The notes beneath the pieces are model-generated. The model made no database searches and was not told the origin of the DNA. It saw nothing but the letters and a program-made list of their open reading frames with translations. A program made the position numbers and the translations under genes. This document shows, piece by piece, positions 5,388 through 43,263 of a DNA stretch of 64,000 nt; positions within the stretch are counted from its first letter, which is position 1, and each line of letters opens with the position of its first letter. Location of the stretch: positions 1 through 64,000 of the IMG/VR virus record IMGVR_UViG_3300046543_000266; one strand, given 5' to 3'.

Positions 5388-5408
5388 CCCTGTAGCATCT
5401 GATCCTTA

Positions 5409-5425
5409 CTCCCAACGAAACGGAG
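5409..5425 (+). repeat. CTCCCAACGAAACGGAG leader cassette
   Basis: Identical 17-mer at 31938, 32684, 33375; 6 nt before ATG 5432. Confidence 0.85.
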
Positions 5426-10449: not shown

Positions 10450-11192
10450 ACAAGGCGATACCAGCGGCTACGAAACCCGCATCTAACTCTCCCACCGTAA
10501 TCCGCTTGACGAAGATCAAGCAGTGGTGGCTCCCAGTCGACGCCGAGTCCTACTTGGCTTTGCGCGAGGCCGGTGTGCCACTCGTCCGCTTTCATGTGGA
10601 CTTCCTCCCAGCGCTATCCCTCATTACGAAGAAGCATCGCATCCGTGCGAAGGAAGTATCCTTCAAGGATGAAATCCTGACGCCGTTCCTCAATCTGGTC
10701 GGCACCACCTGGAACAAGAAGCAACACTGCCGGGCAACCATCGCCGCGCGGTCCATGAAGTTCGAGACCCTGAAGCCCGAGGTCTACACGAAAGCGAAAG
10801 AGAGCATCACGAAGCTCACCGACATCCTCGAGAAGTTCTTTGTTCGGTGGGGCTTCAAATACCAGTTCGAGTACAGCGAGTCGCGCGGTAAGTGTAAATT
10901 GAATGTGGAGTACTACTTCGACAGCACCAAGATGCCGGTCATTCCTCTGGAGACCCCGGTCACTGATCTGCCGAAGGTCCAACTGAAGATCGGCTTTACG
11001 CGCATCACGATGACGTTCGGCGACCGCTATGTGGATACGCTGATCGAAGTCAGTCAGGGTGGCAAGTTCACCCCGTTGCACTCAACGCGTTGCACGTACT
11101 CGCAGATATCCTCAGTCAAACCTATGATCGCGGCACTCATGCAGGTGCCCGATCATGACATTCACAACTTCGACAACTCGGCCACCCCATGA
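10446..11192 (+). CDS. hypothetical protein
   Basis: 248 aa ORF coupled (ATGA) to neighbours. Confidence 0.75.
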   Translation: MNKAIPAATKPASNSPTVIRLTKIKQWWLPVDAESYLALREAGVPLVRFHVDFLPALSLITKKHRIRAKEVSFKDEILTPFLNLVGTTWNKKQHCRATIAARSMKFETLKPEVYTKAKESITKLTDILEKFFVRWGFKYQFEYSESRGKCKLNVEYYFDSTKMPVIPLETPVTDLPKVQLKIGFTRITMTFGDRYVDTLIEVSQGGKFTPLHSTRCTYSQISSVKPMIAALMQVPDHDIHNFDNSATP

Positions 11193-13870: not shown

Positions 13871-13879
13871 GGAATCGAC

Positions 13880-15463
13880 ATGGTAATCAAAAGACGAGTA
13901 GCGAAGCCCGAAGCCGACGATATGGACTTCGACAAACCCGCACCGCGCACACGGGCTCCGGCCCGTCGTGGCAAAGCGCCGGTCAAGCGGGTTCTGAAGG
14001 GTACTGAGGACAAGCACGTCGATAACGAAAGCATCCGTAGCTTCGGCAAGCGCAACATGACCACGTATGCTGTGGCGGTCAACCTCGATCGCAGCGTGCC
14101 TGACATGTACGACGGGTGGAAGCCTGTGCATCGCCGCATCATCTGGGCGGCTTCCACTCAGGCTCGCGACCTAACCAAGACGGCGCGGGTCGTGGGCGAT
14201 ACGCTTGGCAAGTATCACCCCCACGGTGACCGCAGCGTGGCCGACGCCATCGAGACGATGGTCAACATGCCTACTGCTCCGCTTTTGGGCAAGGGCAATT
14301 GGGGATCGATGATCGACAGCGCGGCAGCCATGCGATACACCAACATGAAGCTGTCGGCGTATGGCCTCACGTTCCTGAACCCGCACTACATCCACTCGGA
14401 AGTCACGTCGTTCGTACCCAACTACGACGACAAGGACGTGGAGCCGGTCACGCTTCCGGCGCAGTTGCCGAACGTGCTGATCAACGGCTCCGAGGGTATC
14501 GGCGTTGGCATTACCACTGGCTTGCCGTCGTTCACGCCTGAGTCGATGATCAGTGTGCTGGAGAGCATGCTCAAGGGTGAGAAGCTGAAGGCCGTCGACT
14601 TCGCGAAGCGCCTGAAGTTCGCTCACAAGTGGGGCGGGCAGATCGTCCAGTCGAAGGAGAACCGCTTATCAATGATGGGCATCTTCAACGGCAGCGTCGG
14701 CACTGTACAGTTCGAGTCGGCCATCGAAGTGGATCGTGACCGCAAGAGCATGACCATCGGCGACTGGCCTCCAGGCACTAACCTCGAGAAGTTCGTGGCG
14801 CGTGTCCGGGCCATGCCTGAATGTCAGCGCTGCTATAACAGCGAAGGCGTCACCAACTTCACGATCGAGTGCAAGCCCGCCTACAACTATGTGCAGTTCG
14901 ACAAGTTCGTTGAGAAGGTTCAGGCGGCGACTCGGCAGAAGCGCAACTACAAGATCAACGTAACGCAGCGTGTCGCCAACGATAACGACGGCGTCATTAG
15001 CTTCGAGACCAAGTTCTTGGCGCTGTCGGTGCCTGAGCTGATCTTGCAGTGGTTGCGTATGCGCCTCCAGTTGGAACTGAAAAGTCTGACGTTCCGGATC
15101 AAGAAGCAGGAAGCAGCCATCGCCTACTCCGAGCTCCTGATCTACGCGTGCGACAAACTGGATCTGATCTTCAAGGCGATTCGTAGCAGCGACCCGAAAG
15201 CCGCGATGGTAAAGCTGCTGAAGATCACCGAGGAGCAAGCCAAGCAAATCCTGGAGTTGCGCTTGTCACAACTCACGCGCATGGATCAAAGCGCGATGAA
15301 GGAAAAGCTGGCCGAGCAACGCAGTCATCACAAGCAACTGCTCGTGTGGCAGAAGAAGCCTCGCAGCAAGGTGCTTCTCGATCTCGAAGATGTCCGAGCC
15401 GCAATCGACAAGGACCGGAAGTTCGAAAACACCAAGGAAGAGCAGTCGCTTACGGTGGTGTAA
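13880..15463 (+). CDS. gyrA: type IIA topoisomerase breakage-reunion subunit (GyrA/ParC-like), no CTD pinwheel
   Basis: DGWKPVHRRI, KTARVVGDTLGKYHPHGD, AAMRYT (Tyr 14336-14338); only 527 aa. Confidence 0.95.
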   Translation: MVIKRRVAKPEADDMDFDKPAPRTRAPARRGKAPVKRVLKGTEDKHVDNESIRSFGKRNMTTYAVAVNLDRSVPDMYDGWKPVHRRIIWAASTQARDLTKTARVVGDTLGKYHPHGDRSVADAIETMVNMPTAPLLGKGNWGSMIDSAAAMRYTNMKLSAYGLTFLNPHYIHSEVTSFVPNYDDKDVEPVTLPAQLPNVLINGSEGIGVGITTGLPSFTPESMISVLESMLKGEKLKAVDFAKRLKFAHKWGGQIVQSKENRLSMMGIFNGSVGTVQFESAIEVDRDRKSMTIGDWPPGTNLEKFVARVRAMPECQRCYNSEGVTNFTIECKPAYNYVQFDKFVEKVQAATRQKRNYKINVTQRVANDNDGVISFETKFLALSVPELILQWLRMRLQLELKSLTFRIKKQEAAIAYSELLIYACDKLDLIFKAIRSSDPKAAMVKLLKITEEQAKQILELRLSQLTRMDQSAMKEKLAEQRSHHKQLLVWQKKPRSKVLLDLEDVRAAIDKDRKFENTKEEQSLTVV

Positions 15464-23809: not shown

Positions 23810-23934
23810 AGTAGTCGTTCATCTTGTTTCGCTTGTAGCACTTTGCAGTATAGGCCAATCTAAAATCACAAACGGGACACACCGACCCTTCCCAAACAAT
23901 CATCGGTGTGTCCCTTAAAACAAAGGTAATAAAA

Positions 23935-25692
23935 ATGAAAAAGACGACCATCGCAATCGCAATCCTGTCCTCGTTCGCAGCTCCGGCATTCGCAACGCAG
24001 TACGTGGCCTACGACACGGTTCCGGGCAGTCACGGCCAGTCGGAAGTGGACTACGGCAACGTCACGATGCAGGGTACGAACGGCACGAAGATCCACAACG
24101 TCGCGGCGGGTACGTCAGGCACGGATGCAGTCAATGTCAACCAGCTGAACAGCGCAATCGCTACGGTCAAGACCCAGAAGGGCGATACCGGCGCGACGGG
24201 TGCCACAGGTGCTCAAGGGGTCGCGGGTAAGGACGGCAAGAACGGCATCGATGGTAAGAACGGCATCGATGGTAAGAACGGCATCGATGGAGCAGCGGGT
24301 GCGACCGGCGCTCAAGGCGTCGCAGGTAAGGATGGTGCGAAGGGCGACACTGGCGCACAGGGTATCCAGGGTGTGAAAGGCGATAAGGGTGAGAAGGGCA
24401 ACACTGGCGCTTCTGTTGCTGGCGTGTCTATCAACGGCACGACTGTGACGACAACGCTCGACAACGGTTCGCAGGTGAACGGCACTATCACGGGTCTGGC
24501 TACGACGGAGCAGTTGAACCAGACGAACGTCAACGCCAGCGCTCTGGGTTCGAAGGTGGACCAAGCTACCACGACGGCGAATCAAGCCAAGTCCATCGCA
24601 CAAGGGGCAGACGCCAAGTCGAACACGGCAATCGGCATCGCCGCCGGAGCAGCTATCACCGCGACCGGTGCAGCCATCGTCAGCGGCATCGCCTACGAGA
24701 AGGCTGACAATGCTCAGCAAGTCGCTGGTCAGGCCAACGCCACGTCCAACCAAGCGAAGAACATCGCTCAAGGTGCGGCGTACCAAGCCAGTCACGCAGA
24801 CCAAGTCGCGGCTGAAGCCAACACGACGGCAGGTAAGGCAACCGTCACAGCACAGGCAGCAGATGCGAAGTCGGACATCGCACTGGCAACCGGCGTGAAG
24901 AACAGCGGTGACATCAACAAGCTGAACGCGGGCTTGGCGACTACCAACTCGCATGTCGCGCAGAACACGGCAGACATAGCGGCCAATCAGCAAGCCATCC
25001 GCTCGGAAGCTGGCCGTGCTCAAGACGCTGAGTGGAAGCTGGGATCAGCGATCACGTCGGAAACGTCGCGCGCAACGGCTGCCGAGCAGGGCATCCAGTC
25101 GCAAGTGACGGGCAACACGAAGAGCATCAACAATCTCAACGCACGCCAAGCCAACACCGAAGCGTGGATCGGAAATGCGAACGCGGGAGCCATCGGTCAA
25201 GGCTCGCAAGTGAAGGCGAACAACGCAGTTGCACTCGGTGCTGGCTCCGTGGCAGATCGTGACAATACCGTGTCCGTAGGCGCTGCTGGTCAGGAGCGTC
25301 AGGTCACCAACGTCGCAGCCGGTACGCAAGCAACCGACGCGGTGAACGTGTCGCAGCTGAACAGCTACATGCGTCAGACAGCAAAGGCGGTGGACAACTC
25401 GAATGCCTACACGGATCAGCGAGTCAACGCTCTGCAGTCGTCGTTCGATAGCTTCAAGAAGGATACCTACGGCGGCATCGCAACGGCGCTGGCAATTGCA
25501 GGACTGCCGCAGCCGACGGCTCCGGGTCGTTCGATGGTGTCGGTGGCGGGTTCCACGTATCACGGGGCAACCGGTCTGGCCGCTGGCTACTCGCAGGTAA
25601 CGCAAGACGAGCGTTGGGTGATGAAGGCGTCGGTTACCACGAGCAACCGTGGCGACTTCGGTGCTGTGCTCGGCGCTGGTCGTCAATTCTGA
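23935..25692 (+). CDS. trimeric autotransporter adhesin (YadA-like) with collagen-like G-X-Y segment
   Basis: Signal peptide MKKTTIAIAILSSFAAPAFA; VAAG..TDAVNVxQL necks; GXY repeats; AVALGAGSVA head; anchor GIATALA..GAGRQF. Confidence 0.92.
   Translation: MKKTTIAIAILSSFAAPAFATQYVAYDTVPGSHGQSEVDYGNVTMQGTNGTKIHNVAAGTSGTDAVNVNQLNSAIATVKTQKGDTGATGATGAQGVAGKDGKNGIDGKNGIDGKNGIDGAAGATGAQGVAGKDGAKGDTGAQGIQGVKGDKGEKGNTGASVAGVSINGTTVTTTLDNGSQVNGTITGLATTEQLNQTNVNASALGSKVDQATTTANQAKSIAQGADAKSNTAIGIAAGAAITATGAAIVSGIAYEKADNAQQVAGQANATSNQAKNIAQGAAYQASHADQVAAEANTTAGKATVTAQAADAKSDIALATGVKNSGDINKLNAGLATTNSHVAQNTADIAANQQAIRSEAGRAQDAEWKLGSAITSETSRATAAEQGIQSQVTGNTKSINNLNARQANTEAWIGNANAGAIGQGSQVKANNAVALGAGSVADRDNTVSVGAAGQERQVTNVAAGTQATDAVNVSQLNSYMRQTAKAVDNSNAYTDQRVNALQSSFDSFKKDTYGGIATALAIAGLPQPTAPGRSMVSVAGSTYHGATGLAAGYSQVTQDERWVMKASVTTSNRGDFGAVLGAGRQF
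24235..24288 (+). repeat. 3 x 18 bp tandem repeat (GKNGID)
   Basis: GG(C/T)AAGAACGGCATCGAT x3. Confidence 0.9.
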
Positions 25693-29173: not shown

Positions 29174-29446
29174 ATGACCGCCGACCAAGTTCTTGTGGAC
29201 TTCGAGTTTCTGGCATGGATAGAACGCTGCATGTTCTTCCGCAAAGACATGGCCCTTCACCTGAAACGGATTGGCCTCGACGATCAGGCAGTCTTCGAGT
29301 TCACCCACTCTGACGCCGTCAAGGCCGCCAGTGTGGTCCAGCTCTATCAAGACATAGGCATGTATCGCCCGGAAGAGTTCAAGCTGTTCATCATGGATTG
29401 CTGGAACACCTACCAAACACTCTCTGCCATAGTGCATCCGACATGA
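29174..29446 (+). CDS. hypothetical protein
   Basis: GGAG SD before ATG 29174, in frame with ORF 28880..29446. Confidence 0.6.
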   Translation: MTADQVLVDFEFLAWIERCMFFRKDMALHLKRIGLDDQAVFEFTHSDAVKAASVVQLYQDIGMYRPEEFKLFIMDCWNTYQTLSAIVHPT

Positions 29447-30084
29447 ATCAGCAACTGTTCTTCACAGCAGACCTGCACTTCGGTCATGCTGGCATCCTGA
29501 AGCATACCGCACGCGGCACCCTCTTCGACAGCATCAACCAGCATGACCTCCACGTGGTCGACTCTATCAACAAGGTCGTTGGCGCCAAGGACATCCTGTA
29601 CATTCTCGGTGACGTTTCGTGGTACGGTCAGTGGGTCACCGGCGCATTGATCGACGGCATCCGCTGCCAGAACCGCTATCTGGTGTACGGCAATCACGAC
29701 AACAAGCTGCGCGACTTCTACAAGACGTCCGGTCTATTCAAGGAATGCAGCGACCGCATGTTCTTCAAGCACTACAGCAACAAGCTCTGTCTCGACCACT
29801 TCCCGAGCGCTGAGTGGGCCGAAGCCCATCATGGCAGCTGGATGTTGCATGGTCACACGCATGGTTCTTTCGACTACGAGGCACGAGGCCTCGCCAACTA
29901 TCGCATCTTCGATGTGGGTTGGGACGAGAGCCCCAAGCACGACACGGGTTATGGCTACCATCCCGATGCTCATGGGTACAAACCCTTCAGCCTCGACTTC
30001 CTGAACAAGCAGATCGGCAGCAAGGAGAAACTCCCACATCATGGTTACACGCGCCCGGACGGCTACGAAAGCGAATCCCGATAG
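29443..30084 (+). CDS. calcineurin-like metallophosphoesterase
   Basis: FTADLHFGH, LGD, GNHD, LHGHTH motifs. Confidence 0.9.
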   Translation: MNQQLFFTADLHFGHAGILKHTARGTLFDSINQHDLHVVDSINKVVGAKDILYILGDVSWYGQWVTGALIDGIRCQNRYLVYGNHDNKLRDFYKTSGLFKECSDRMFFKHYSNKLCLDHFPSAEWAEAHHGSWMLHGHTHGSFDYEARGLANYRIFDVGWDESPKHDTGYGYHPDAHGYKPFSLDFLNKQIGSKEKLPHHGYTRPDGYESESR

Positions 30085-31409: not shown

Positions 31410-31477
31410 GTTGTTTTTACGCAACACGGGCCTTCGGAGGGCATGGTATAATAAAGTGCGGGCGCGCCTCTTCCGCA
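31410..31477 (+). promoter_or_regulatory. palindrome + extended -10 + 5' stem-loop
   Basis: GTTGTTTTTACGCAAC 31410-31425; 21 nt; TGgTATAAT (31447-31452); GTGCGG/CCGCAC hairpin. Confidence 0.8.
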
Positions 31478-31543
31478 CTGGAGCACTGTGCAATTGTCCC
31501 CGGCAATGCGGCAGCCGGTGTGTCCGTCGCGCGTCCCGCACCC

Positions 31544-31568
31544 TCTGATACCTCCTTCCGATATGGAG
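31544..31568 (+). repeat. TCTGATA..CTCC-N9-GGAG leader cassette
   Basis: CTCC-TTCCGATAT-GGAG 31552-31568, 5 nt before ATG 31574. Confidence 0.7.
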
Positions 31569-31573
31569 CAAGA

Positions 31574-31894
31574 ATGGAACATCGTCAATGGCTGCTGGCC
31601 CCGAAGTACCCGCTGATCACCAAGCTGCTCAACGCATACCTCGTACACATCCAGGTCGAAGGCGTCGACCCGGAGTCAATCCTGGCCGAGATTGACGAAG
31701 ACTTCGGTGACGAGAACGGCTTCGATGCCGCCGAAGCGTATCTTGCCACTCTGGGCGAAGAGCAGTTCGTGAAGCTCGCGTCCTCCGAAGCTGGCAAGGA
31801 ATACGAAGCCTTCTCCAAGTCCATTCCCGACGAGCACCACGGAGCGCGGTCAGCACTGGCGGACTTGTTCGAAACCGCCGACAACTTCAAGTAA
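31574..31894 (+). CDS. acidic early protein, paralog of N-terminus of 32707
   Basis: 106 aa, 22 D/E vs 8 K/R (hand count); GARSALADLF shared. Confidence 0.8.
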   Translation: MEHRQWLLAPKYPLITKLLNAYLVHIQVEGVDPESILAEIDEDFGDENGFDAAEAYLATLGEEQFVKLASSEAGKEYEAFSKSIPDEHHGARSALADLFETADNFK

Positions 31895-31900
31895 CATGAC

Positions 31901-31954
31901 GGGGGCCTTCGGGTCCCCATCCGCACTTCTGATAAACCTCCCAACGAAACGGAG
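31901..31954 (+). repeat. UUCG hairpin + leader cassette
   Basis: GGGGGCC-TTCG-GGTCCCC 31901-31918; TCTGATA; CTCCCAACGAAACGGAG 31938-31954. Confidence 0.85.
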
Positions 31955-31959
31955 AACAC

Positions 31960-32310
31960 ATGAACAACGCACAACACAAGTGGGCAGTCATCACCAATGG
32001 CGATCTGCTGGTCCAAGAATGCGACGACCGCAATCATGCAGAGCGCATCGCAAAGAAGGCCAACGACTGGCACGCCTCGCAAGTGGCCGAGGGTCTTATC
32101 CAAGGACTCGGCACTGTGCGTTACGGTGTCCGCAGCCCCGCTGGTCAACGCATCTTCGCTGGAGTGGTCGAGACCGCCGTCCAGCCGGTCCTGCTCCAAG
32201 CGGCTCTTCGTCGCAACGGCGTCTGGCTTGTTGACACCAACGGCAACGCCACTGACTTCTATCATCGCGGCTGCTTCCAACACAATCTGCAGTCGAAGGC
32301 TGTCCACTGA
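31960..32310 (+). CDS. hypothetical protein
   Basis: 116 aa after cassette. Confidence 0.75.
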   Translation: MNNAQHKWAVITNGDLLVQECDDRNHAERIAKKANDWHASQVAEGLIQGLGTVRYGVRSPAGQRIFAGVVETAVQPVLLQAALRRNGVWLVDTNGNATDFYHRGCFQHNLQSKAVH

Positions 32311-32333
32311 TATCTACTCCCTACGAAACGGAG
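32307..32333 (+). repeat. leader cassette
   Basis: CTGATATCTA-CTCCCTACGAAACGGAG. Confidence 0.8.
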
Positions 32334-32657: not shown

Positions 32658-32700
32658 GGCCCTTCGGGGCCTCCTGATATAAACTCCCAACGAAACGGAG
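32658..32700 (+). repeat. UUCG hairpin + leader cassette
   Basis: GGCCC-TTCG-GGGCC; CTGATA; CTCCCAACGAAACGGAG 32684-32700. Confidence 0.85.
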
Positions 32701-32706
32701 CACCAC

Positions 32707-33330
32707 ATGACAAAGATCACCAATCTCAAGACCCTCGCCGATCTGTACCCGACCACCAACAAGCTGATCCGGATGTATCTCGACGAGGTCGACGCCGGTG
32801 ACGTGCATGTTGCTGACGTGTACATCGAGATGGAATCGGGTCCCGGGGAACCCGCTCTGATGGCGGTGGAGTGGTACTGCAAGACGCTTACCGAAGATCA
32901 GCTTGAGCAAATGGTCGAGATGGCTGTCGATAACTTCGACAAGTATGCCAAGACCATCCCGCCTCAGCATTACGGCGCACGCTCGGCACTGGCCGATCTG
33001 TTCACTGCGTGCGACGTCTACGCGGATGGTGGTAGCGAAGCGGCACTGCTCCCAGCAGATGTCCTGCCACTGGCGAAGAAGCCATACTTCTTGGTCCTCA
33101 AGCCCAACGCAGCGCCGCATCTCGACAAAGAAATGAAGTTCTTCACCGGATTCAGCGCGCACATGGAACCCAACTTCGTAGCACTTCCGGACAACAGCCC
33201 GCTGGAAATTGGCCTTCGCGTCGTCACGTACTGGACAAAGAGCGCGGCGGCTGCGGGATTGGCTGAGCTGGTCGCGTGGTATGCGACGAACGGCCAGACA
33301 CCTTCGCGTAACCTGACCATAGCACAGTAA
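32707..33330 (+). CDS. two-domain early protein; N-terminal domain paralogous to 31574
   Basis: YPTTNKLIRMYL..TIPPQHYGARSALADLF. Confidence 0.8.
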   Translation: MTKITNLKTLADLYPTTNKLIRMYLDEVDAGDVHVADVYIEMESGPGEPALMAVEWYCKTLTEDQLEQMVEMAVDNFDKYAKTIPPQHYGARSALADLFTACDVYADGGSEAALLPADVLPLAKKPYFLVLKPNAAPHLDKEMKFFTGFSAHMEPNFVALPDNSPLEIGLRVVTYWTKSAAAAGLAELVAWYATNGQTPSRNLTIAQ

Positions 33331-33334
33331 CAAG

Positions 33335-33391
33335 ATGGGGACCTTCGGGTCCCTATCGGCGCTTCTGATACAAACTCCCAACGAAACGGAG
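33335..33391 (+). repeat. UUCG hairpin + leader cassette
   Basis: GATGGGGACC-TTCG-GGTCCCTATC; TCTGATA; CTCCCAACGAAACGGAG 33375-33391. Confidence 0.85.
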
Positions 33392-33397
33392 CATTCC

Positions 33398-33604
33398 ATG
33401 CCAGCCATCTACGTAACTCTCGTGAACTCTGGGTCCTACGACCGCAGCAAAGACCGTTCCACCATCGTGTACTCCACCACCCCAACGCATGAACTTATCA
33501 TGTGGGTTCACAAGTCGTATCCGGATCTGGGTATGACTCAAGCAGTTGTCCAGCACATCCTCAAGCAGTTGAAGCTCGGCCGTTCCAACTGCACCATCGC
33601 CTGA
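33398..33604 (+). CDS. hypothetical protein
   Basis: ATG 33398 after cassette. Confidence 0.7.
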   Translation: MPAIYVTLVNSGSYDRSKDRSTIVYSTTPTHELIMWVHKSYPDLGMTQAVVQHILKQLKLGRSNCTIA

Positions 33605-33630
33605 TCTCGCAGTCATCTACGGAGAAGACA

Positions 33631-33855
33631 GTGAAGAACTTTCAACAAACGCCCAAGCAGCGTCGGCTTCAGAAGCAGAAGCTGGAGTTGTCCAAACGCG
33701 CCGCCGCTCACTCGAAGCCGCACTTCACGCCGCGCGACTCGTGGACTTCCAAGCGCAAGATCGGGGATGCCCCGCTCTCGGTGCTGGCTCGCAAGCAACC
33801 CAGTCTGGCTGCCGTCTTTGACTGGCCCGGTTGGGGTTGGGGCGAAAGCTGGTAA
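33631..33855 (+). CDS. small basic hypothetical protein
   Basis: GGAG SD before GTG 33631. Confidence 0.6.
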   Translation: MKNFQQTPKQRRLQKQKLELSKRAAAHSKPHFTPRDSWTSKRKIGDAPLSVLARKQPSLAAVFDWPGWGWGESW

Positions 33856-33935
33856 CTTCAATCAATCAACAGCGGTCACCACATGGTGACCGCTTCATCG
33901 CCGTAATCTATCAGACACACAGTGGAGCATCGAAC

Positions 33936-34391
33936 ATGAAAGCGAAGCAGCAAGCATCGACCCCGACCCTCGTTCTACGTTCAGTCCGGCCGTCGAAGCT
34001 CGCCACACCGCAGAGTCTGAATCAGATTCTGTCACACCTGCGCTTGGCTTCCGAGCGCCTCGGTTCCTGCATACCCTTGGCTGAATGTCACGACGACCGC
34101 GTCGCCAAGTGTGGTTACAACGGCCACGAAACACATACCCGCGTCGAGTCTGGAGCCATCGAATTGTGGCTGACTGAGGATCAGGACTCGACGTTCACAC
34201 GCGCCTCCAATCTGGGGTGGGTGCTCGTAGGATGCTGGTCTGCGCCTGTGACCTACGGTCCGGCCAAGATTCTGCTGATCCTTGGCAACCGTGACCAAGT
34301 AGTTGGCCTCATGCCGAGCGGCAAGATGGAGCGAGCTCCTGCTGGTAGCAGGTCATTCGTCATCCCACGTCAGTGGTGGAATGCGCGGTAA
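33936..34391 (+). CDS. hypothetical protein
   Basis: GGAG SD before ATG 33936. Confidence 0.65.
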   Translation: MKAKQQASTPTLVLRSVRPSKLATPQSLNQILSHLRLASERLGSCIPLAECHDDRVAKCGYNGHETHTRVESGAIELWLTEDQDSTFTRASNLGWVLVGCWSAPVTYGPAKILLILGNRDQVVGLMPSGKMERAPAGSRSFVIPRQWWNAR

Positions 34392-34407
34392 TCACAACGA
34401 GGCTCCA

Positions 34408-34917
34408 ATGCAAATCAATCGAGATAGTGAAGTGTTCAACGTGGTAGCCGGAGCCCTGTCGTTGGCTAGTCCGGCGCATCCGATGCCGCGATACGTAACC
34501 CCACGCAGTTCATTGCAAGTCAACGTCCACGGTTCGCGTGGCATCAACTGGCGATTGCTGGTCACAACCATCAACGCTCGAATCCCCGCAATGCCACCCA
34601 TCACCGTTGAAGAGGCGAGCGGTTGCATCACAGTGGCTGACCTGTGTCGTTTGGTTGCGTCGCGACAGTCCGGCGAGTCGTCGGTCACCAACACGCTGAC
34701 TCCGCGCCAGACCTATGCGTGCTCGTTGCTCGTCGGTCAGTTGCGTGATTTCACGCCCGAGGCATTGCGTGGCTTTGGTGAGTATTTGGCAACTCGCGAC
34801 GGTGATCGGGATCTGGTGCTGGATCAGTTGCGCAAGATGGTGAGCTCCATCGTCAGCCATGCCCCCGGTTCCGGCACCTCACAGGTGCTACCCTTTCGAC
34901 ACAAAGTCAACGATTGA
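34408..34917 (+). CDS. degenerate acyl-carrier-protein-like N-terminal domain fusion
   Basis: ITVEEASGCITVADLCRLV mirrors ITDEEAALCCTVQHATRLV of 35939; no DS motif. Confidence 0.5.
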   Translation: MQINRDSEVFNVVAGALSLASPAHPMPRYVTPRSSLQVNVHGSRGINWRLLVTTINARIPAMPPITVEEASGCITVADLCRLVASRQSGESSVTNTLTPRQTYACSLLVGQLRDFTPEALRGFGEYLATRDGDRDLVLDQLRKMVSSIVSHAPGSGTSQVLPFRHKVND

Positions 34918-34942
34918 AATTTCTGAATACGAAGGTGAATCC

Positions 34943-35230
34943 ATGACCGATCCGAACCCGCCGTATGAAAAGGAAGTCTCTCCCTCGGAGCAAAAGAGCC
35001 GTGATCATGTGACCGGCTCGCGCTTTCGCCTAACCACCGACGCCTATCACGAGTGGGCGTCTCATAAGTGGGTGATGTATGCCGCGGTCACCATCCGCGG
35101 TAAGCAGTTGCTCATGGAAGGCAACATGCTCGGTATGTACCGTGTGACCATTGGGTCCCACGTGGATACTCCGCGCTATCACGGCCCCAGTCTTGTGGAT
35201 GCAGTCAACGCGTACAACGAGGAACTGTAA
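34943..35230 (+). CDS. hypothetical protein
   Basis: AAGGTG SD. Confidence 0.65.
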   Translation: MTDPNPPYEKEVSPSEQKSRDHVTGSRFRLTTDAYHEWASHKWVMYAAVTIRGKQLLMEGNMLGMYRVTIGSHVDTPRYHGPSLVDAVNAYNEEL

Positions 35231-35679
35231 TGGCTGAGCCGCGCATCTCGACGACTAATCCGGATTGGTCCTCTCTTGAGGAGGACATCGGCAAGATCAT
35301 GTTCGACAATGTCCGGGCCCATAGAGTGGTTCCGAACCTAGCAGACTTCCTGCTAACACAGGCTGAAGCTTCGGCGTTCGCCAAGTTGGTTCTGTCTAAC
35401 ACGAAGCCCATGGATATGCCGTATCTGTCTGTGGGTATAAACGGTTTGTCCCACGACCGGCTGATCACATGGTCCAGGACCAGTTCCTTCGACGCTCCGC
35501 ACAACAACGATGGCGTAGTCATTCAGGTGCTTGGTAATGGTGGCGTGGAAATCAGTCGCGAGGGTCACTGGCCCTTCGCCGCATTCTTGGTGAGTTATCG
35601 CCTAGATCACACAGGCAACATCAGGCAAGCAAAATGCTTGATATCCGACAACCAATCCGATCCCAACAAGGAGTTATAA
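35230..35679 (+). CDS. hypothetical protein
   Basis: TAATG coupling. Confidence 0.6.
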   Translation: MAEPRISTTNPDWSSLEEDIGKIMFDNVRAHRVVPNLADFLLTQAEASAFAKLVLSNTKPMDMPYLSVGINGLSHDRLITWSRTSSFDAPHNNDGVVIQVLGNGGVEISREGHWPFAAFLVSYRLDHTGNIRQAKCLISDNQSDPNKEL

Positions 35680-35680
35680 C

Positions 35681-35896
35681 ATGCCTTTCGATATCCGCTT
35701 CAAACGTGCTACTGCGGTTGCCGACGCGCTCGACGATTACTTCTTGGCGAAGGATCTCTTCGCGAAGGTTAGTAACGAGTGCCGTGAAAATCACGGTATG
35801 GTCATTCACGACATCGTTCACAACGAGCAGAGTGCGCTGGATGCAACTCGTCAGACGTTCATCCGAGCCTTGGTTGACATTCAGACCGGCATCTGA
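35681..35896 (+). CDS. hypothetical protein
   Basis: AAGGAG SD, 71 aa. Confidence 0.7.
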   Translation: MPFDIRFKRATAVADALDDYFLAKDLFAKVSNECRENHGMVIHDIVHNEQSALDATRQTFIRALVDIQTGI

Positions 35897-35938
35897 ACAT
35901 CTAAACCTCCGCAAGAACTCACATAACTGGAGAGTACC

Positions 35939-36493
35939 ATGACCAAGAAAGCAACTATGAAGCTCAAGCCTCAGTCCACGCTTGAACAAGTCCGGGCGGC
36001 GGTATGTCAAGCGTTGGGTCTCAACAAGAGTGCGCTTCGCGATGACGCCCACTTCGCAAACGATCTGGGTGCCGATAGTATCGACCTCGGCGAGATCTTC
36101 ACCAATCTCGAAGAGGCGTTCGACATTTCGATTACCGATGAAGAAGCCGCGCTGTGCTGCACGGTTCAGCACGCCACTAGACTGGTTGAACTGAAGCTTC
36201 GGCCCGAAGAGGGCACTCGCTGGTACATCGTGTATCTCGACAACGACCCGAGCGTCTTGGGCCTCGTCGAGTTGAAGATCAACAGTGTGCCGCTGGACCA
36301 CAAGCCCTACGGTAACCGAGGTGACGAGATAGACCATCTGCACACGGTGCCGAACAAGTCGCACCTGAAGCGGGCGTCCTATCAAGCCTTCCCCAAGATG
36401 GAAGACGCTGCCGAGTACGGGGCTCAGCTGGCTCGTACACATAGCAAGTCGTTCTACCTGTTTGACACACAGTTCCGCATTCTCGACAACTAA
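35939..36493 (+). CDS. acyl carrier protein domain fused to unknown C-terminal domain
   Basis: FANDLGADSIDLGEIFTNLEEAFDISITDEEA; Ser codon 36077-36079. Confidence 0.85.
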   Translation: MTKKATMKLKPQSTLEQVRAAVCQALGLNKSALRDDAHFANDLGADSIDLGEIFTNLEEAFDISITDEEAALCCTVQHATRLVELKLRPEEGTRWYIVYLDNDPSVLGLVELKINSVPLDHKPYGNRGDEIDHLHTVPNKSHLKRASYQAFPKMEDAAEYGAQLARTHSKSFYLFDTQFRILDN

Positions 36494-36504
36494 CAGAGGC
36501 CATA

Positions 36505-36750
36505 ATGAAAACACGCCAACTGTGGGCGCACGTACGAGCCAATGTGTTCTGTCTGGGAAGACTGTGTCTTTTGGTCAAAACCGGCAAAGCATGGTCGGTG
36601 GAAACCCAGAGTGTCGAATTAGACGGTGGGTCCACCACCGTGGCGTATATTGGAGCAGTCCATGTACCCAAGGGTCAGTCGTGGCCCAATGGTGAAGGCA
36701 TAGAGCGTGTCGCGTTCTATGGACGCCGCCTCACACTGAAGGAACTTTAG
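36505..36750 (+). CDS. hypothetical protein
   Basis: GAGG SD. Confidence 0.6.
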   Translation: MKTRQLWAHVRANVFCLGRLCLLVKTGKAWSVETQSVELDGGSTTVAYIGAVHVPKGQSWPNGEGIERVAFYGRRLTLKEL

Positions 36751-36796
36751 AACGGCTCCTACCTAGGAGCTGCCAAACAATCACGGAGATACGCGC

Positions 36797-37132
36797 ATGA
36801 ATGCACATACTATCACGGCGACGAACCCGATCACGGCTGTGCGCAAGGTCCACCTGATGGATCTGCTGTGTAAGTACCGTATGGAAGTAACGATAGACCA
36901 GGACGCCGAGTGGGAATGGGAACCCAACAATCAGCTGTCCATACATGACGTCGTGTACGACCTATCGGTCAAGGCCGAGTGGGGAGGCAAGCGTTCAGAC
37001 AACTTCAGCTTCCGGCCACAGGCAGGTCGGGCCGGTGGTGATGCCTACTTCCGAGCCTTGGAACAGGCTATCCATTCCTGGGTCAAGAAGAATGGTAAGC
37101 ACGAAGCCGCGTTCAGTGCGGAGCCCCTCTAA
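36797..37132 (+). CDS. hypothetical protein
   Basis: GGAG SD. Confidence 0.65.
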   Translation: MNAHTITATNPITAVRKVHLMDLLCKYRMEVTIDQDAEWEWEPNNQLSIHDVVYDLSVKAEWGGKRSDNFSFRPQAGRAGGDAYFRALEQAIHSWVKKNGKHEAAFSAEPL

Positions 37133-37335
37133 TGTTCCGAGTCATCATCAAGGGGCCGAACAACACGCAAGCAGTCCTCAATCCCGAACAGTTCCAGGCA
37201 GTGCGTCATATCATCGTGAAGATGATGAACAACGGTATGACGCGTGCCCGCGCCCATATCACGATAGCCGAGCGTCTGGCCGAAGTTGGCCTTCCCCTAC
37301 AATTCGTTGAACGGAGTAATAAACATGCCGACTAA
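37132..37335 (+). CDS. hypothetical protein
   Basis: TAATG coupling. Confidence 0.6.
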   Translation: MFRVIIKGPNNTQAVLNPEQFQAVRHIIVKMMNNGMTRARAHITIAERLAEVGLPLQFVERSNKHAD

Positions 37336-37825
37336 ATCTGGTGTAGCAACCCTTGCGGATCTGAAGCAAGGTGTGTCCCTGTTCTATGTGTTCAGTGTGT
37401 CCGACGCCAGCGGTACGCGTCGTGTTGCTCATGAAGTAGAACGCTTTGAAGTCATCCGAGTAACTCGCGATTTTATCGGGAATCGGTATTCGACTCGCGT
37501 CCACTTCAAGAGCCCCGACCGCTGGTCTATCGATCACCCGCAGGGCCGTCCGGCACCGATGGACGTTGACCAGATGTTTGCTGAGGACATGGGTATCCAT
37601 CCCAAGGGCCGAGTCTGGATCCGAGACGTTGGTCACAAGTGTTTCCTGTCGTATGCCCGCGCCGAGTCGTATCGCAAACGTCTGATCGCAACACCGCAGT
37701 CCGCGAAGGAAACAAAGCACGCCATCTACGTACACCAGCTCCTTCTGAAGTCGATGTCTACTGCACAAAGGTTCGGTGCCCCTAAGGAACAGTTGTTCAA
37801 GATGGTCGAACAGATGGAGGGTTAA
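37325..37825 (+). CDS. hypothetical protein
   Basis: GGAG SD before ATG 37325. Confidence 0.65.
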   Translation: MPTKSGVATLADLKQGVSLFYVFSVSDASGTRRVAHEVERFEVIRVTRDFIGNRYSTRVHFKSPDRWSIDHPQGRPAPMDVDQMFAEDMGIHPKGRVWIRDVGHKCFLSYARAESYRKRLIATPQSAKETKHAIYVHQLLLKSMSTAQRFGAPKEQLFKMVEQMEG

Positions 37826-37852
37826 TACCACATCAACCAACGGAGGGCTACC

Positions 37853-38107
37853 GTGCCGAAGATAAAGAAGATGTTCGAACCGCCCCCAGTCTCTGGACGG
37901 TTCACGTATCGGGGAACGAAGAACAGTCGGCCGCCTCCCAACAAGCCCGCGCTGTTCATTTGTCAGCAGCAAGTAGGTATCTTCGACCTGAACGATCCGT
38001 TCGTGGTCGCTGCCTACAACAATGCCGTTCTACTGTATCCGCACAGTGATATGCTGACGGATCTTCAGTTGTTCAATGATCTATGCAATACCTTTCTAGC
38101 GAGGTAA
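37853..38107 (+). CDS. hypothetical protein
   Basis: GGAGG SD before GTG. Confidence 0.6.
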   Translation: MPKIKKMFEPPPVSGRFTYRGTKNSRPPPNKPALFICQQQVGIFDLNDPFVVAAYNNAVLLYPHSDMLTDLQLFNDLCNTFLAR

Positions 38108-39014: not shown

Positions 39015-39067
39015 GTTGTTTTGACGCAACACGCCCGCTAGGAGGCTATGTTAGGGCGTGGTATAAT
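39015..39067 (+). promoter_or_regulatory. palindrome + extended -10 promoter
   Basis: GTTGTTTTGACGCAAC 39015-39030; 31 nt; TGgTATAAT (39062-39067) then AAGGTGCG. Confidence 0.8.
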
Positions 39068-39169
39068 AAGGTGCGGGCGCAGCGCGCATCACTCACAGCG
39101 CGTGGCACGTCTACTCCAGGCGGCGCTCCTGCCCCGCATCTGATAACGTCTAACGAAAGGACAACCAAT

Positions 39170-41331: not shown

Positions 41332-43263
41332 ATGAATACCAATCAAGATCTCGTATCGTTGAAGCGACAGTACAAACGGGCGGTGGTCGCGTACTACAAC
41401 GCAGACAAGCCCATCATGACAGACGCCGCCTTCGACAAGCTGGAGGACCAGATCCGCAAGGCTGATCCGTCGTGGAAGGAACTGGCTAACACTGGCGTCA
41501 AGGTTGCGGACAAGAAGACCGAGGCACCGTTGGTCGAGTTCATGCCTAGTCTCAACAAGATGTACCCGGAAGCGGTCAGCAAGTTCTACGCTCGCCCCGC
41601 GTCGGCCAAGGTCGGCGCATGGCTATGGATGGACAAGCTGGATGGGACCAGCCTCCAGCTAGTGTACAAGAACGGTCGCCCCTTCAAGCTTATCACGCGT
41701 GGCGACGGCACTCTTGGTGGTGACATCAGCTTCTTCCTGCCTACCTTGGTGAAGCTCAAGCGTATCCCGGCCCAGATCCCCACCAACGGACAGGTGGTGT
41801 TCCGCATCGAGGGTCTGATGTCAGTCAAGACGTTCGCGAAGAAGTGGTCGCGAGGCGTCCGGGGTAAGCTCGGGTTCGACAACATCCGCAACATGGTGAA
41901 CGGCCTCTTCAACAAGAAGGACATGCATCCGGCGCTGGTTGATGTGGACTTGGTGGTGTTGGGAGTGTACGACATGACCATGTACAAAGGTCTGCAGACG
42001 GCAGCCCAATGGGGATTCAACGTCGTGCATTATCAAGTAGTGAAGGGTCACAAGGATTCAGAGAAGGGTCACAAGGACGCAGAAGCGCACGGCAAAGCGT
42101 TGGAGGATCGTCGTGCCGCCAGCATTTACGAGATGGATGGTCTGGTGATTGCTCCGATGATGTTCGAGTTGTCCTATCCCAACGCGGACAAGCCCAAGGC
42201 ACTGATCGCCTTCAAGTTCAACGACGAGGAAAATGCGCAGCAGGTCGTGGTAGAGGACATCATCTGGCAAAAGACGCGGCTCAAGCGCTGGATACCGAAG
42301 ATCAACATCAAGCCCACCAAGATGGACGGCGTCATGGTTTCGAATGCGGCCGCCCACAACGCTGAGTGGATGAAGGAGAAGGGTATCGGGCCGGGAGCTA
42401 TCGTCAAGGTTCTGCGCAGTGGTGGCGTCATCCCGAAGATTGTGGGCGTCGTCAAGAAGGCTGCATTCAAGGAACCGCCTGGACCGTATGAAGTTCAGGG
42501 CGTCCACTTCGTCATGGCCGAGCACGACAAGGCAACCGAAGTACGTGGCATCCACTTCTTCATGACCACGCTTGGCGTCGAGCTCCTGGCCTCGAAGACC
42601 ATCAGCTTGCTGTATGACCACGGCTTCACGACGCCTGAATCCTATATCAAGCTGGCCCACGCATCGGACAAGATCATCAAGCATACGCTGGCTCCCGCAG
42701 AGTTGGGTCCAAAGCAAAGCGCCAAGATCATCGCTGAGCTGAAGCGCGTGCTGTGCAACACGGTGTCGCTGCGTCTGCTGATGGTGGCGTCGGGTGCCTT
42801 CGAGAAGGGTGGCATGGGTAAGCGCAAGCTGGAGCAGCTGGAGGACGCTGGTATCGCAATGGCCCGCTTGTGCAACATGAAGAGCCCTGAGCTTATCAGC
42901 ACGGTGGAAAACATCAAGGGCTTCAGCAGCAAGACTGCCACGATTCTGAATGACGGCGTGAAGGTGTTCCGTGAATGGTATCGTCCGCTGAAGGGCGTGC
43001 TCACCGTGGACGGCGCGTTACCTAAGAAGGCGAAGCCAGTCGCTGGTGGCAAGCTGTCTGGTATCAACGTGGCCTGGACTTCGTACCGGGACAAGGATCA
43101 GGAAGCGAAGGTTGTGGCCCTCGGCGGTGCCGTGGTTCCGTACGGTGCCAAGATGACGGTCCTGCTGTACAAGGAAGGAGCCAAGTTCGCAGCCAAGATC
43201 GAGAAGGCTGGCGACAAGGCCATGACGTGGGAAACGTTCACCAACAATTATGGAGTCAAGTAA
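41332..43263 (+). CDS. ligA: NAD-dependent DNA ligase (BRCT present, no obvious C4 Zn finger)
   Basis: YYN..PIMTDAAFDKL, MPSLNK, KLDG, TRGDG..G.DI, EMDGLV, AFKF, RSGGVIPKI. Confidence 0.93.
   Translation: MNTNQDLVSLKRQYKRAVVAYYNADKPIMTDAAFDKLEDQIRKADPSWKELANTGVKVADKKTEAPLVEFMPSLNKMYPEAVSKFYARPASAKVGAWLWMDKLDGTSLQLVYKNGRPFKLITRGDGTLGGDISFFLPTLVKLKRIPAQIPTNGQVVFRIEGLMSVKTFAKKWSRGVRGKLGFDNIRNMVNGLFNKKDMHPALVDVDLVVLGVYDMTMYKGLQTAAQWGFNVVHYQVVKGHKDSEKGHKDAEAHGKALEDRRAASIYEMDGLVIAPMMFELSYPNADKPKALIAFKFNDEENAQQVVVEDIIWQKTRLKRWIPKINIKPTKMDGVMVSNAAAHNAEWMKEKGIGPGAIVKVLRSGGVIPKIVGVVKKAAFKEPPGPYEVQGVHFVMAEHDKATEVRGIHFFMTTLGVELLASKTISLLYDHGFTTPESYIKLAHASDKIIKHTLAPAELGPKQSAKIIAELKRVLCNTVSLRLLMVASGAFEKGGMGKRKLEQLEDAGIAMARLCNMKSPELISTVENIKGFSSKTATILNDGVKVFREWYRPLKGVLTVDGALPKKAKPVAGGKLSGINVAWTSYRDKDQEAKVVALGGAVVPYGAKMTVLLYKEGAKFAAKIEKAGDKAMTWETFTNNYGVK

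What the first reader, a model, noticed from the sequence alone, without database searches (positions are those of the whole stretch)
34408..36493. Two acyl-carrier-protein-domain fusions, one intact and one degenerate
35939 has a canonical ACP (LGADSIDL, Ser 36077) followed by ~95 aa of unrelated sequence. 34408 has a similar helix pattern (ITVEEASGCITVADLCRLV) but no DS motif, with a different C-terminal domain. No fatty-acid or PKS genes are in the window. Established: host ACP is a partner of SpoT, MukB and lipid A enzymes. Inference: ACP mimics or decoys that target cargo domains to ACP-binding host proteins, or drain AcpS/CoA.
Basis: partly seen in the sequence, partly recalled or inferred. 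Interest (0 to 1): 0.6.

Follow-up and report, generated by a model that had tools for sequence, protein, structure and literature searches.

The report
Phage carrier protein fusion plus serine-less copy
A soil jumbo phage carries one genuine acyl carrier protein fused to a conserved domain with no known relatives. One kilobase upstream lies a second protein that keeps part of the carrier-protein shape but has lost the attachment serine. This is an unusual variant of the orphan carrier proteins already seen in many large phages, whose function is still unknown.

Summary
The window is the first 64 kb of a 217.6-kb phage genome with direct terminal repeats, related to Ralstonia phiRSL1, Burkholderia BCSR5 and Achromobacter Motura.

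**ORF 35939-36493 (184 aa).** It has a true AcpP-type carrier domain (Pfam PP-binding E 5.6e-10; fold Z 12.9 to E. coli ACP). The DS motif (Ser47 at 36077) and the acidic helix II are intact. Residues 88-184 have no relative among 1.84 billion representative proteins except in one sister phage contig. Between the two phages this part is better conserved than the ACP part (85% against 46% identity).

**ORF 34408-34917 (169 aa).** It has no family hit. Residues 63-86 match phage-lineage ACP helices III-IV far above shuffles. The ESM Atlas model of residues 5-90 has only PP-binding proteins as nearest structures. Gly45 sits where the serine should be, and the domain is basic (pI 8.9).

**Context.** Neither this phage nor its three named relatives encodes a phosphopantetheinyl transferase or any fatty-acid, polyketide or acyltransferase enzyme that I searched for. 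Each relative has one ACP.

**Reading.** The phage ACP was probably duplicated. One copy is still modifiable by host AcpS and gained a new domain. The other copy is a non-carrier scaffold. The mechanism is inferred, not shown. The "decoy" idea remains possible for 35939 and is unlikely for 34408.

The parts
34408..34917 (+). Gene for a 169-aa protein: serine-less ACP-like N-terminal domain plus a helical C-terminal domain
   Evidence: ORF with GAGG 7 nt upstream. A 68%-identical syntenic orthologue, P0005, lies in sister contig L002. dN/dS is 0.19. No Pfam, PHROG, NCBIfam or PADLOC hit.
34408..34677 (+). N-terminal domain (residues 1-90), ACP-like, basic (pI 8.9)
   Evidence: ESM Atlas model: the nearest structures all carry PF00550; residues 5-90, 82 aligned, TM 0.64 normalised by the hit. 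The AF2 helix pattern H8-20, H48-58, H67-71, H76-88 mirrors the true ACP of 35939. hhalign probability is 84-89% over 70 columns. pI.
34540..34542 (+). Gly45 codon (GGC) at the position of the phosphopantetheine-attachment serine
   Evidence: Profile alignment puts Ser47 of the ACP opposite Gly45, and Asp46 opposite Arg44. The sister phage has Lys-Gly there. The nearby Ser43 is Thr in the sister phage.
34594..34665 (+). Residues 63-86 (PITVEEASGCITVADLCRLVASR): the stretch that carries the significant sequence similarity to ACP helices III-IV
   Evidence: hhalign of this stretch alone scores 36.0 (E 9.5e-8); 60 shuffles gave mean 8.1, sd 2.0, max 17.1. It sits at the same residue numbers (64-87) as in 35939. 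The Cys of the 'C-I/C-T' motif is shared with the ACPs of 35939, P0002 and BCSR5.
34678..34914 (+). C-terminal domain (residues 91-169): three predicted helices, unassigned
   Evidence: AF2 helices 99-111, 117-127 and 131-151, at low confidence. The only lead is sigma-70 region 4 (PDB 1tty) at E 0.35-0.84. PF04545 found nothing in the genome at E<=10.
35939..36493 (+). Gene for a 184-aa protein: AcpP-type carrier domain fused to a lineage-specific C-terminal domain
   Evidence: ORF with GGAGAG upstream. A 66%-identical syntenic orthologue, P0002, is also one ORF. dN/dS is 0.24.
35984..36166 (+). PP-binding (ACP) domain core, residues 16-76
   Evidence: PF00550 at E 5.6e-10 and 2.5e-11. VIA Z 12.9, rmsd 1.9, 76 residues, 37% identity to E. 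coli ACP 4ihf_G. PDB phmmer best hits are AcpPs at E 1.8e-12.
36077..36079 (+). Ser47 codon (AGT), predicted 4'-phosphopantetheine attachment site in the LGADSIDL motif
   Evidence: Read from the sequence. D46 and S47 are invariant in all 11 ACPs of alignment A4.
36200..36490 (+). C-terminal domain (residues 88-184): alpha/beta, no detectable relatives, the best-conserved part of the protein
   Evidence: 84-85% identity to P0002 with dN/dS 0.14, against 46% and 0.29 for the ACP part. An exhaustive profile search of 1.84e9 representatives found only P0002 and a repeat-inflated chance hit. No Pfam, PHROG, PADLOC, PDB or phage-tblastn hit. AF2 pLDDT is 43-69. The ESM Atlas model shows only weak SPOR/RNP-like likeness, TM 0.45-0.53.

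Best explanation
The two genes are diverged copies of the orphan AcpP-type carrier-protein gene that every phiRSL1-like jumbo phage carries.

35939 is still a working carrier protein. Host AcpS would put 4'-phosphopantetheine on Ser47, because the phage has no transferase of its own. Host fatty-acid enzymes could then load it. In this sub-lineage it has been fused to a new, strongly constrained 95-residue alpha/beta domain. That domain most likely fixes the holo- or acyl-carrier to one particular target, or acts on what the carrier holds.

34408 has lost the serine (Gly45) and the acidic partner-recognition helix. It has become basic and carries a small helical domain. It can no longer be a carrier. 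It is best read as an ACP-fold scaffold re-used for another interaction, possibly regulatory.

Both genes sit in a block of small, same-strand genes without known families, which suggests a role in handling the host rather than in building the virion.

Shown: domain identities, loss of the serine, absence of partner enzymes, purifying selection, lineage distribution. Inferred: modification by host AcpS, the duplication origin, and every statement about what the proteins do.
For: 35939 is an ACP:
- PF00550 matches at E 5.6e-10 and PHROG 5934 at E 9.5e-15.
- The fold matches E. coli ACP at Z 12.9, and PDB sequence hits are AcpPs.
- The DS motif and helix II acidic residues are invariant in alignment A4.

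No phage-encoded partner was found:
- PF01648 and PF00501 are absent from this genome.
- PF00109, PF01553, PF00132, PF13561 and PF00698 are absent from this phage and from BCSR5, phiRSL1 and Motura.
- PF01648 is also absent from those three relatives.

The ACP is a lineage feature:
- BCSR5, phiRSL1 and Motura each have exactly one PF00550 gene.
- Their lengths differ: Motura 81 aa and phiRSL1 87 aa, BCSR5 162 aa.

The C-domain is constrained and unique:
- 85% identity and dN/dS 0.14, against 46% and 0.29 for the ACP part.
- No relative in 1.84e9 representatives.

34408 is derived from an ACP:
- hhalign scores 36.4 against shuffles with a maximum of 18.2. Against the BCSR5 ACP alone it aligns 71 columns at score 29.7.
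- The matching stretch has the same residue numbering as in 35939.
- It shares a Cys motif with the phage-lineage ACPs.
- The ESM Atlas structural neighbours all carry PF00550.

34408 has lost carrier features: Gly45, pI 8.9.

Both genes are real and selected:
- They are syntenic orthologues in L002, with dN/dS 0.19-0.24.
- Near-identical copies occur in several rhizosphere metagenomes.
Against: - No experiment shows modification, loading or any partner.
- The docking test of the ACP domain on E. coli AcpS gave no verdict.
- The ACP domain scores below NCBI's AcpP equivalog cut-offs (61.6 against 70.45 bits). It evolves faster than its C-domain, which is unexpected if it must serve many host enzymes.
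- For 34408, residues 1-62 give no sequence signal of their own (11.3 against shuffles of 8.8+-2.0).
- My AlphaFold2 model of 34408 is poor (pLDDT 43) and found no ACP. The fold assignment therefore rests on one language-model structure and a 24-residue motif.
- Neither C-terminal domain has an assigned fold.
- Time of expression was not measured; no RNA run holds the stretch.
Confidence: 0.5

Rival explanations
1. 35939, with or without its prosthetic group, competes with host ACP for AcpS, CoA or ACP-binding proteins (SpoT, MukB, lipid A and phospholipid enzymes). Its C-domain is delivered as cargo, and host lipid synthesis or stress signalling is shut down or redirected.
For: The helix II recognition residues and the DS motif are kept. 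The closest structures are housekeeping ACPs in complex with LpxD and AcpS. No phage enzyme needs the carrier. That host ACP binds SpoT, MukB and lipid A enzymes is established knowledge from E. coli; I did not test it here.
Against: The ACP domain is only 46% identical between two close phages, which is loose for a mimic of a highly conserved host protein. Stand-alone ACPs in the relatives carry no cargo, so the lineage's basic ACP function does not need one. No binding was shown (one search gave no verdict). The model does not explain 34408, which has lost the ACP surface.
Confidence: 0.2
2. 35939 is an auxiliary metabolic gene in the plain sense. It is an extra carrier protein that raises the host's capacity for fatty-acid, lipid or lipoate/biotin-related synthesis during infection, and its C-domain is only a stabilising or oligomerising appendage. 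34408 is an unrelated small protein whose likeness to ACP has no functional meaning.
For: Phage ACPs are common and are usually annotated this way. The literature says their function remains unclear (PMC5463345), and duplicated ACP modules are reported in jumbophages (PMC13573597). Relatives carry plain ACPs of 81-87 aa.
Against: The C-domain is the most constrained part of the protein (dN/dS 0.14, 85% identity), which does not fit a mere appendage. 34408 keeps a highly significant ACP motif at the same position, under purifying selection.
Confidence: 0.15
3. 34408 is not an ACP homologue at all. The 24-residue match is convergence on an amphipathic helix-turn-helix pattern, and the protein is an all-helical regulator (for example sigma region 4-like) of independent origin.
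For: Residues 1-62 carry no sequence signal. Pfam, NCBIfam and PHROG profiles do not see it. The AF2 model gives no ACP match. There is a weak sigma region 4 likeness in residues 92-145.
Against: The match stands about 14 sd above shuffles. It lies at the same distance from the N-terminus as in the neighbouring true ACP. It is closest to ACPs of the same phage lineage and shares a Cys with them. The ESM Atlas model of residues 5-90 has only PP-binding neighbours. PF04545 finds nothing.
Confidence: 0.15

Closest known systems
Bacterial type II fatty-acid-synthase acyl carrier protein (AcpP; Pfam PF00550, TIGR00517)
   Same: 35939 residues 11-88 have the same four-helix fold (Z 12.9, 37% identity to E. 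coli ACP). The DSL-type serine sits at the start of helix II, helix II is acidic, and the domain pI is 4.9.
   Different: It scores below the AcpP equivalog cut-offs. It is fused to a 97-residue domain. It is encoded by a phage without any FAS enzyme or transferase. It has a Cys-Cys pair in the helix III-IV loop.
Orphan ACPs of phiRSL1-like and other large phages (PHROG 5934; phiRSL1 ORF083, Motura QDH83467, BCSR5 QRE00220; also P-HM1, phiCbK, ViI, PhiW-14)
   Same: Each has a single PP-binding gene with an intact serine and no partner enzymes in the phage. Function is unknown in all of them (PMC5463345).
   Different: phiRSL1 and Motura have plain ACPs of 81-87 aa. BCSR5 has an N-terminal extension instead. 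The C-terminal domain here, and the serine-less second copy, were found only in this phage and in contig L002.
Phage ACP fusions and duplicated ACP modules (PHROG 27464, a 157-position profile with the ACP at positions 21-95; carrier-domain proteins of 134-617 aa in BFVD; duplicated ACPs in Flavobacterium jumbophages)
   Same: An ACP domain joined to extra sequence, or two ACP-like genes close together, in large phages (PMC13573597).
   Different: The extra domain here matches none of them. The second copy here has lost the serine, which the cited report does not mention for its phages.
Non-modifiable carrier-protein-like domains (carrier folds without the serine, known in some synthases). Named from general knowledge; not tested here.
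   Same: 34408 keeps part of the ACP sequence and probably the fold, but has Gly at the attachment site.
   Different: It is a free-standing phage protein, basic rather than acidic, with its own C-terminal domain. No synthase context exists.

Membership tests
Acyl carrier protein / PP-binding (PF00550): ORF 35939 | Profile match above Pfam's gathering score | tested here: met
   39.8 bits against 20.8, E 5.6e-10, residues 16-76; 41.8 bits in the genome scan.
Acyl carrier protein / PP-binding (PF00550): ORF 35939 | Conserved serine in a (D)S(L/I) motif at the N-terminus of helix II | tested here: met
   The motif is LGADSIDL with Ser47 at 36077-36079. D46 and S47 are invariant in A4. Helix 50-61 follows in the model.
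Acyl carrier protein / PP-binding (PF00550): ORF 35939 | Four-helix carrier-protein fold | tested here: met
   VIA Z 12.9, rmsd 1.9, 76 of 76 residues of 4ihf_G. All 50 rows shown, and the 58 chains with Z>=8, are carrier proteins or carrier domains. pLDDT is 76-86 over most of the domain.
Acyl carrier protein / PP-binding (PF00550): ORF 35939 | Covalent 4'-phosphopantetheine on the serine | not testable with these tools
   This needs mass spectrometry. The docking test with E. coli AcpS gave no verdict.
Housekeeping AcpP (NCBIfam TIGR00517 / NF002148 equivalogs): ORF 35939 | Score above the curated equivalog cut-off, as a stand-alone protein of about 78 aa | tested here: not met
   TIGR00517 scores 61.6 against 70.45, and NF002148 scores 63.4 against 71. 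The protein is 184 aa with a second domain.
Acyl carrier protein / PP-binding: ORF 34408 N-domain | Profile match to PF00550 or NCBIfam ACP models | tested here: not met
   No hit at E<=10 (Pfam) or at E<=0.1 (NCBIfam).
Acyl carrier protein / PP-binding: ORF 34408 N-domain | Attachment serine | tested here: not met
   Gly45 aligns with the serine in both phages. Ser43 is Thr in the sister phage.
Acyl carrier protein / PP-binding: ORF 34408 N-domain | Detectable homology to ACPs by profile-profile comparison | tested here: met
   hhalign probability is 82-89%, E 2e-6 to 1e-5. The score of 36.4 compares with a shuffle maximum of 18.2. The signal is confined to residues 63-86.
Acyl carrier protein / PP-binding: ORF 34408 N-domain | Four-helix carrier-protein fold | tested here: inconclusive
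   The ESM Atlas model's nearest structures all carry PF00550 (residues 5-90, TM 0.64 by the hit). The AF2 helix pattern agrees. But the AF2 model has pLDDT 43 and found no ACP (best Z 4.9; BFVD nothing).
Acyl carrier protein / PP-binding: ORF 34408 N-domain | Acidic helix II / acidic protein | tested here: not met
   pI is 8.9 and net charge +1.7. The helix II equivalent, GINWRLLVTTINARI, has no acidic residue.
Sigma-70 region 4 / HTH: ORF 34408 C-domain | Match to PF04545 or a significant match to a solved region 4 | tested here: not met
   PF04545 gave no match in the genome at E<=10. The 1tty match has E 0.35-0.84 only. This is a lead, not membership.
SPOR / RNP-like domain: ORF 35939 C-domain | Match to PF05036, or a confident structural match | tested here: not met
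   No Pfam hit at E<=10. ESM Atlas TM is 0.45-0.53 on a model of pLDDT 0.59. AF2 pLDDT is 43-69.

The most novel reading that the evidence does not exclude
A jumbo-phage sub-lineage has turned its carrier protein into a two-part host-directed device. The first part is a holo-ACP covalently joined to a new effector or anchoring domain with no relatives in public sequence space, so that a host-loaded acyl or phosphopantetheine arm is held at one specific target. The second part is a serine-less, charge-reversed ACP paralogue joined to an HTH-like domain, which acts as its regulator or as a sensor of the same target. That would be the first assigned role for phage ACPs and a new use of the ACP fold.
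Probability: 0.1. Interest if true: 0.65.

Novelty: new variant of a known kind. Interest (0 to 1): 0.35.

Why it matters
Orphan acyl carrier proteins turn up in many large phages and are routinely labelled 'auxiliary metabolic genes', but nobody knows what they do. This locus offers two natural handles on the question. One is a carrier fused to a strongly conserved unknown domain, which should point to the place where the carrier acts. The other is a neighbouring copy that has lost exactly the features needed for carrier function, which gives a built-in negative control. If the fused domain's partner were found, it could explain the phage ACP class as a whole. The pair occurs in only two related rhizosphere phages, so by itself it is a lineage curiosity.

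Tried and rejected
- **AcpS docking.** I docked the 35939 ACP domain on an E. coli AcpS trimer (complex prediction). The score was 0.16 against a mark of 0.34: no verdict, so I do not use it either way.
- **Exhaustive search with the C-domain.** The second hit, P0017 (E 7.6e-4), is a 2359-aa RTX-type repeat protein. Eight identical repeats each give a weak 41-residue match. I rejected it as repeat-inflated chance.
- **PDB search with the 34408 C-part.** The designed 'Pizza' propellers on top are repeat inflation of a 17-residue match. Rejected.
- **BcsO (PF17037).** The hit on 34408 is 16-18 bits against a cut-off of 27, and it is absent in the orthologue. Rejected.
- **Fusion-of-neighbours idea.** I tested whether the 35939 C-domain is the gene that follows the ACP in Motura or phiRSL1, or the BCSR5 N-extension, now fused. 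I found no similarity.
- **RtcB link.** phiRSL1 ORF082, just upstream of its ACP, looks like an RtcB RNA ligase from its motifs (my reading, no family search run). This genome has no blastp hit to it at E<=1e-3, so no conserved pairing was found.
- **Searches that found nothing.**
  - DNA searches of the phage collection, near and distant.
  - tblastn of 34408 and of the C-domain.
  - An IMG/VR locus scan.
  - A 34408 profile against BCSR5, phiRSL1 and Motura.
  - PADLOC.
  - BFVD and ESM Atlas shape searches beyond the ACP part.
- **Paralogues inside the genome.** None beyond the weak 34408/35939 match.
Full report
**Where the window lies.** The window is bases 1-64000 of a 217,605-bp virus record with direct terminal repeats, judged complete. 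It carries the following genes:
- topoisomerase II subunits at 11189-15463;
- a collagen-like tail fibre at 23908-25692;
- an NAD-dependent ligase at 41332-43263 (all);
- a topoisomerase IB-like gene at 60242-61945, which is 61% identical to that of Ralstonia phage phiRSL1, 52% to Burkholderia phage BCSR5 and 48% to Achromobacter phage Motura.

It is therefore a phiRSL1-like jumbo phage. DNA of the studied stretch occurs almost unchanged in many rhizosphere metagenomes. No listed run that holds it is on record as RNA, so expression is untested.

**The observation.** Both ORFs exist as described, on the + strand, each behind a Shine-Dalgarno-like sequence.

**ORF 35939-36493 (184 aa), the ACP part.**
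- It matches Pfam PP-binding over residues 16-76 (E 5.6e-10, above the cut-off) and PHROG 5934 'acyl carrier protein'.
- Its AlphaFold2 model is confident in this part (pLDDT 76-86 over most of it).
- The model superposes on E. coli ACP from the LpxD complex with Z 12.9, rmsd 1.9 A, 76 residues and 37% identity. Every row shown in that search is a carrier protein or carrier domain.
- By sequence, the nearest solved proteins are housekeeping AcpPs (E 1.8e-12).
- Ser47 (36077-36079) lies in LGADSIDL. D46, S47 and the acidic helix II residues E52 and E58 are invariant across the phage-lineage ACPs and the bacterial ACPs I aligned.
- The domain falls short of NCBI's AcpP equivalog cut-offs (61.6 against 70.45 bits). 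It is a diverged ACP, not a copy of a host acpP.

**ORF 35939, the C-terminal part.** Residues 88-184 hit nothing in Pfam, PHROGs, PADLOC, the PDB or the phage collection.
- An exhaustive HMMER profile search of 1.84 billion representative proteins returned only the orthologue P0002 and a repeat-inflated chance match.
- The model is poor here (pLDDT 43-69; a beta-alpha-beta-alpha-beta-beta order).
- The ESM Atlas model gives only weak SPOR/RNP-like likeness (TM 0.45-0.53). I do not treat that as an assignment.

The one relative is on a 9-kb Logan contig (L002). That contig is colinear with window 29.4-39.9 kb, at 42-81% protein identity. Between the two phages the ACP part is 46% identical (dN/dS 0.29) and the C-domain is 85% identical (dN/dS 0.14). 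The fused domain is thus the most constrained part, and the fusion is one ORF in both phages.

**ORF 34408-34917 (169 aa).** No family library recognises it. Its only relatives are P0005 on the same sister contig (68% identity) and a 108-aa, 100%-identical fragment, P0006. dN/dS against P0005 is 0.19, so it is a real, selected gene.

1. **Profile-profile comparison.** Against an 11-sequence ACP alignment, hhalign gives probability 82-89% and E 2e-6 to 1e-5. The score of 36.4 stands far above 200 column shuffles (mean 9.6, sd 1.9, max 18.2).
   - The match falls at the same residue numbers (64-87) as in 35939.
   - It is strongest to the ACPs of this phage lineage: against the BCSR5 ACP alone it aligns 71 columns with score 29.7. 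A Cys in the helix III-IV loop is shared with them.
2. **Predicted helices.** The helices 8-20, 48-58, 67-71 and 76-88 mirror those of the true ACP, 14-26, 50-61, 67-71 and 76-87.
3. **ESM Atlas structure.** The Atlas's own model of this protein (pLDDT 0.63) has only PP-binding proteins among its nearest structures. It aligns residues 5-90, 82 of them, with TM 0.64 normalised by the 92-aa hit.

Two cautions apply.
- The sequence signal sits almost entirely in residues 63-86 (score 36.0). Residues 1-62 alone score 11.3, against shuffles of 8.8+-2.0.
- My AlphaFold2 model is poor (pLDDT 43) and found no ACP in the PDB or BFVD.

I put the ACP-fold reading at about three in four.

**What 34408 has lost.** In the alignment the attachment serine is replaced by Gly45 and the preceding Asp by Arg44. 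The sister phage has Lys-Gly at those positions. The nearby Ser43 is Thr in the sister phage. The helix II equivalent, GINWRLLVTTINARI, has no acidic residue. The domain has pI 8.9, against 4.9 for the real ACP domain. It can hardly be phosphopantetheinylated, and it does not present the acidic surface by which ACPs meet their partners.

Its C-terminal 80 residues are predicted as three helices. The only lead is sigma-70 region 4 (PDB 1tty) at E 0.35-0.84. The Pfam region 4 profile finds nothing. I keep this as a lead only.

**Context.** All neighbours from 33.4 to 38.6 kb are small, same-strand genes. Eight of the ten tested have no PHROG family, and two have only weak hits to families of unknown function. 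The window has two genes that the sister contig lacks, 35230-35679 and 36797-37132.

The phage encodes none of the following:
- a phosphopantetheinyl transferase or an adenylating enzyme;
- a ketosynthase, a malonyl transferase, a short-chain reductase, a hexapeptide (LpxA/LpxD-type) acyltransferase or a PlsC-type acyltransferase.

BCSR5, phiRSL1 and Motura also lack the families tested in them. Yet each of those three has exactly one PP-binding gene:
- a plain 87-aa ACP in phiRSL1;
- a plain 81-aa ACP in Motura;
- a 162-aa protein with an N-terminal extension in BCSR5.

An orphan ACP is therefore a conserved trait of the lineage. The C-terminal fusion and the serine-less copy are specific to this phage and its sister: I found no 34408 relative in the three named phages. 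More widely, phage ACPs of 74-617 aa, some with extra sequence, are common. PHROG 27464 is an ACP with a C-terminal extension. Duplicated ACP modules have been noted in freshwater jumbophages (PMC13573597). The literature states that the function of phage ACPs is unclear (PMC5463345).

**How it most likely works.**
- *Shown:* the domain identities, the intact and the lost serine, the missing partner enzymes, purifying selection and the lineage distribution.
- *Inferred:*
  - 35939 is modified by the host's AcpS and can be loaded by host enzymes.
  - Its constrained C-domain fixes the holo- or acyl-carrier at one target, or acts on what it carries.
  - 34408 arose by duplication of the phage ACP and now serves as a non-carrier scaffold, perhaps regulatory.
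A plain metabolic booster with an inert appendage is contradicted by the C-domain's strong constraint. A non-homologous origin of 34408 is contradicted by the position-matched motif and the Atlas model.
- The docking of the ACP domain on E. coli AcpS gave no verdict and is not used.

**Verdict.** The finding is real and correctly described. It is a new variant (a fusion plus a pseudo-carrier paralogue) of a known but functionally unexplained kind, the orphan phage ACP. It is confined to two related rhizosphere phages, and both added domains remain without fold or function. Interest is moderate. Its main value is as an experimental entry point to the phage ACP question.

Noticed in passing
window 5399-5425, 32307-32333, 32674-32700, 33365-33391 (+): A 27-nt element, CTGATAYAAACTCCCAACGAAACGGAG, lies a few bases before start codons. 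It occurs 4 times with up to 3 mismatches, against 0 expected from shuffles. It is probably a shared promoter/leader with a built-in ribosome-binding site.
   Followed up: partly
window 31890-31934 and 33326-33370 (+): A G+C-rich hairpin, GGGG(G/A)CCTTCGGGTCCC, sits just after stop codons and just upstream of the element above. It has no T-run. It may be a phage-specific terminator or RNA-processing site.
   Followed up: no
window 31438-31465 and 39053-39080 (+): Two 28-nt copies (93% alike) contain TGGTATAAT, an extended -10-like box. They may bracket the transcription unit that holds both ACP-like genes. The simple sigma-70 scan found no full promoter in 33000-38000.
   Followed up: no
window 31520-31894 and 32707-33330 (+): Two small genes of unknown function are paralogues: 36% identity over 98 aa (E 1e-15), sharing the motif HGARSALADLF.
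   Followed up: partly
window 35230-35679 and 36797-37132 (+): Two ORFan genes (149 and 111 aa) are present here but absent from the otherwise colinear sister contig L002. These are recent gains or losses inside the block, on either side of the ACP fusion gene.
   Followed up: partly
L009 3369-4888 (phiRSL1 ORF082-ORF083): In phiRSL1 the ACP gene directly follows a 417-aa gene whose sequence looks like an RtcB RNA ligase (my reading of its motifs, no family search run). This genome has no blastp match to it at E<=1e-3, so no conserved pairing was seen.
   Followed up: partly
L003 5788-6276 (BCSR5 QRE00220): The BCSR5 'acyl carrier protein' is 162 aa. It has an ~80-residue helical, lysine-rich N-terminal extension before the ACP. 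This is an independent fusion in the same phage lineage, with no similarity to either added domain here.
   Followed up: partly
window 29398-30084 (+): This ORF has motifs of a calcineurin-like metallophosphoesterase (DLHFGH, GNHD, GHTH), read by eye from the translation. It is 79% identical in the sister contig. I ran no family search on it.
   Followed up: no
window 35621-36514 (-): A 297-aa antisense open frame overlaps the whole ACP fusion gene. The Pfam match on the + strand and the low dN/dS of the + frame indicate that the antisense frame is a by-product of composition, not a gene.
   Followed up: partly
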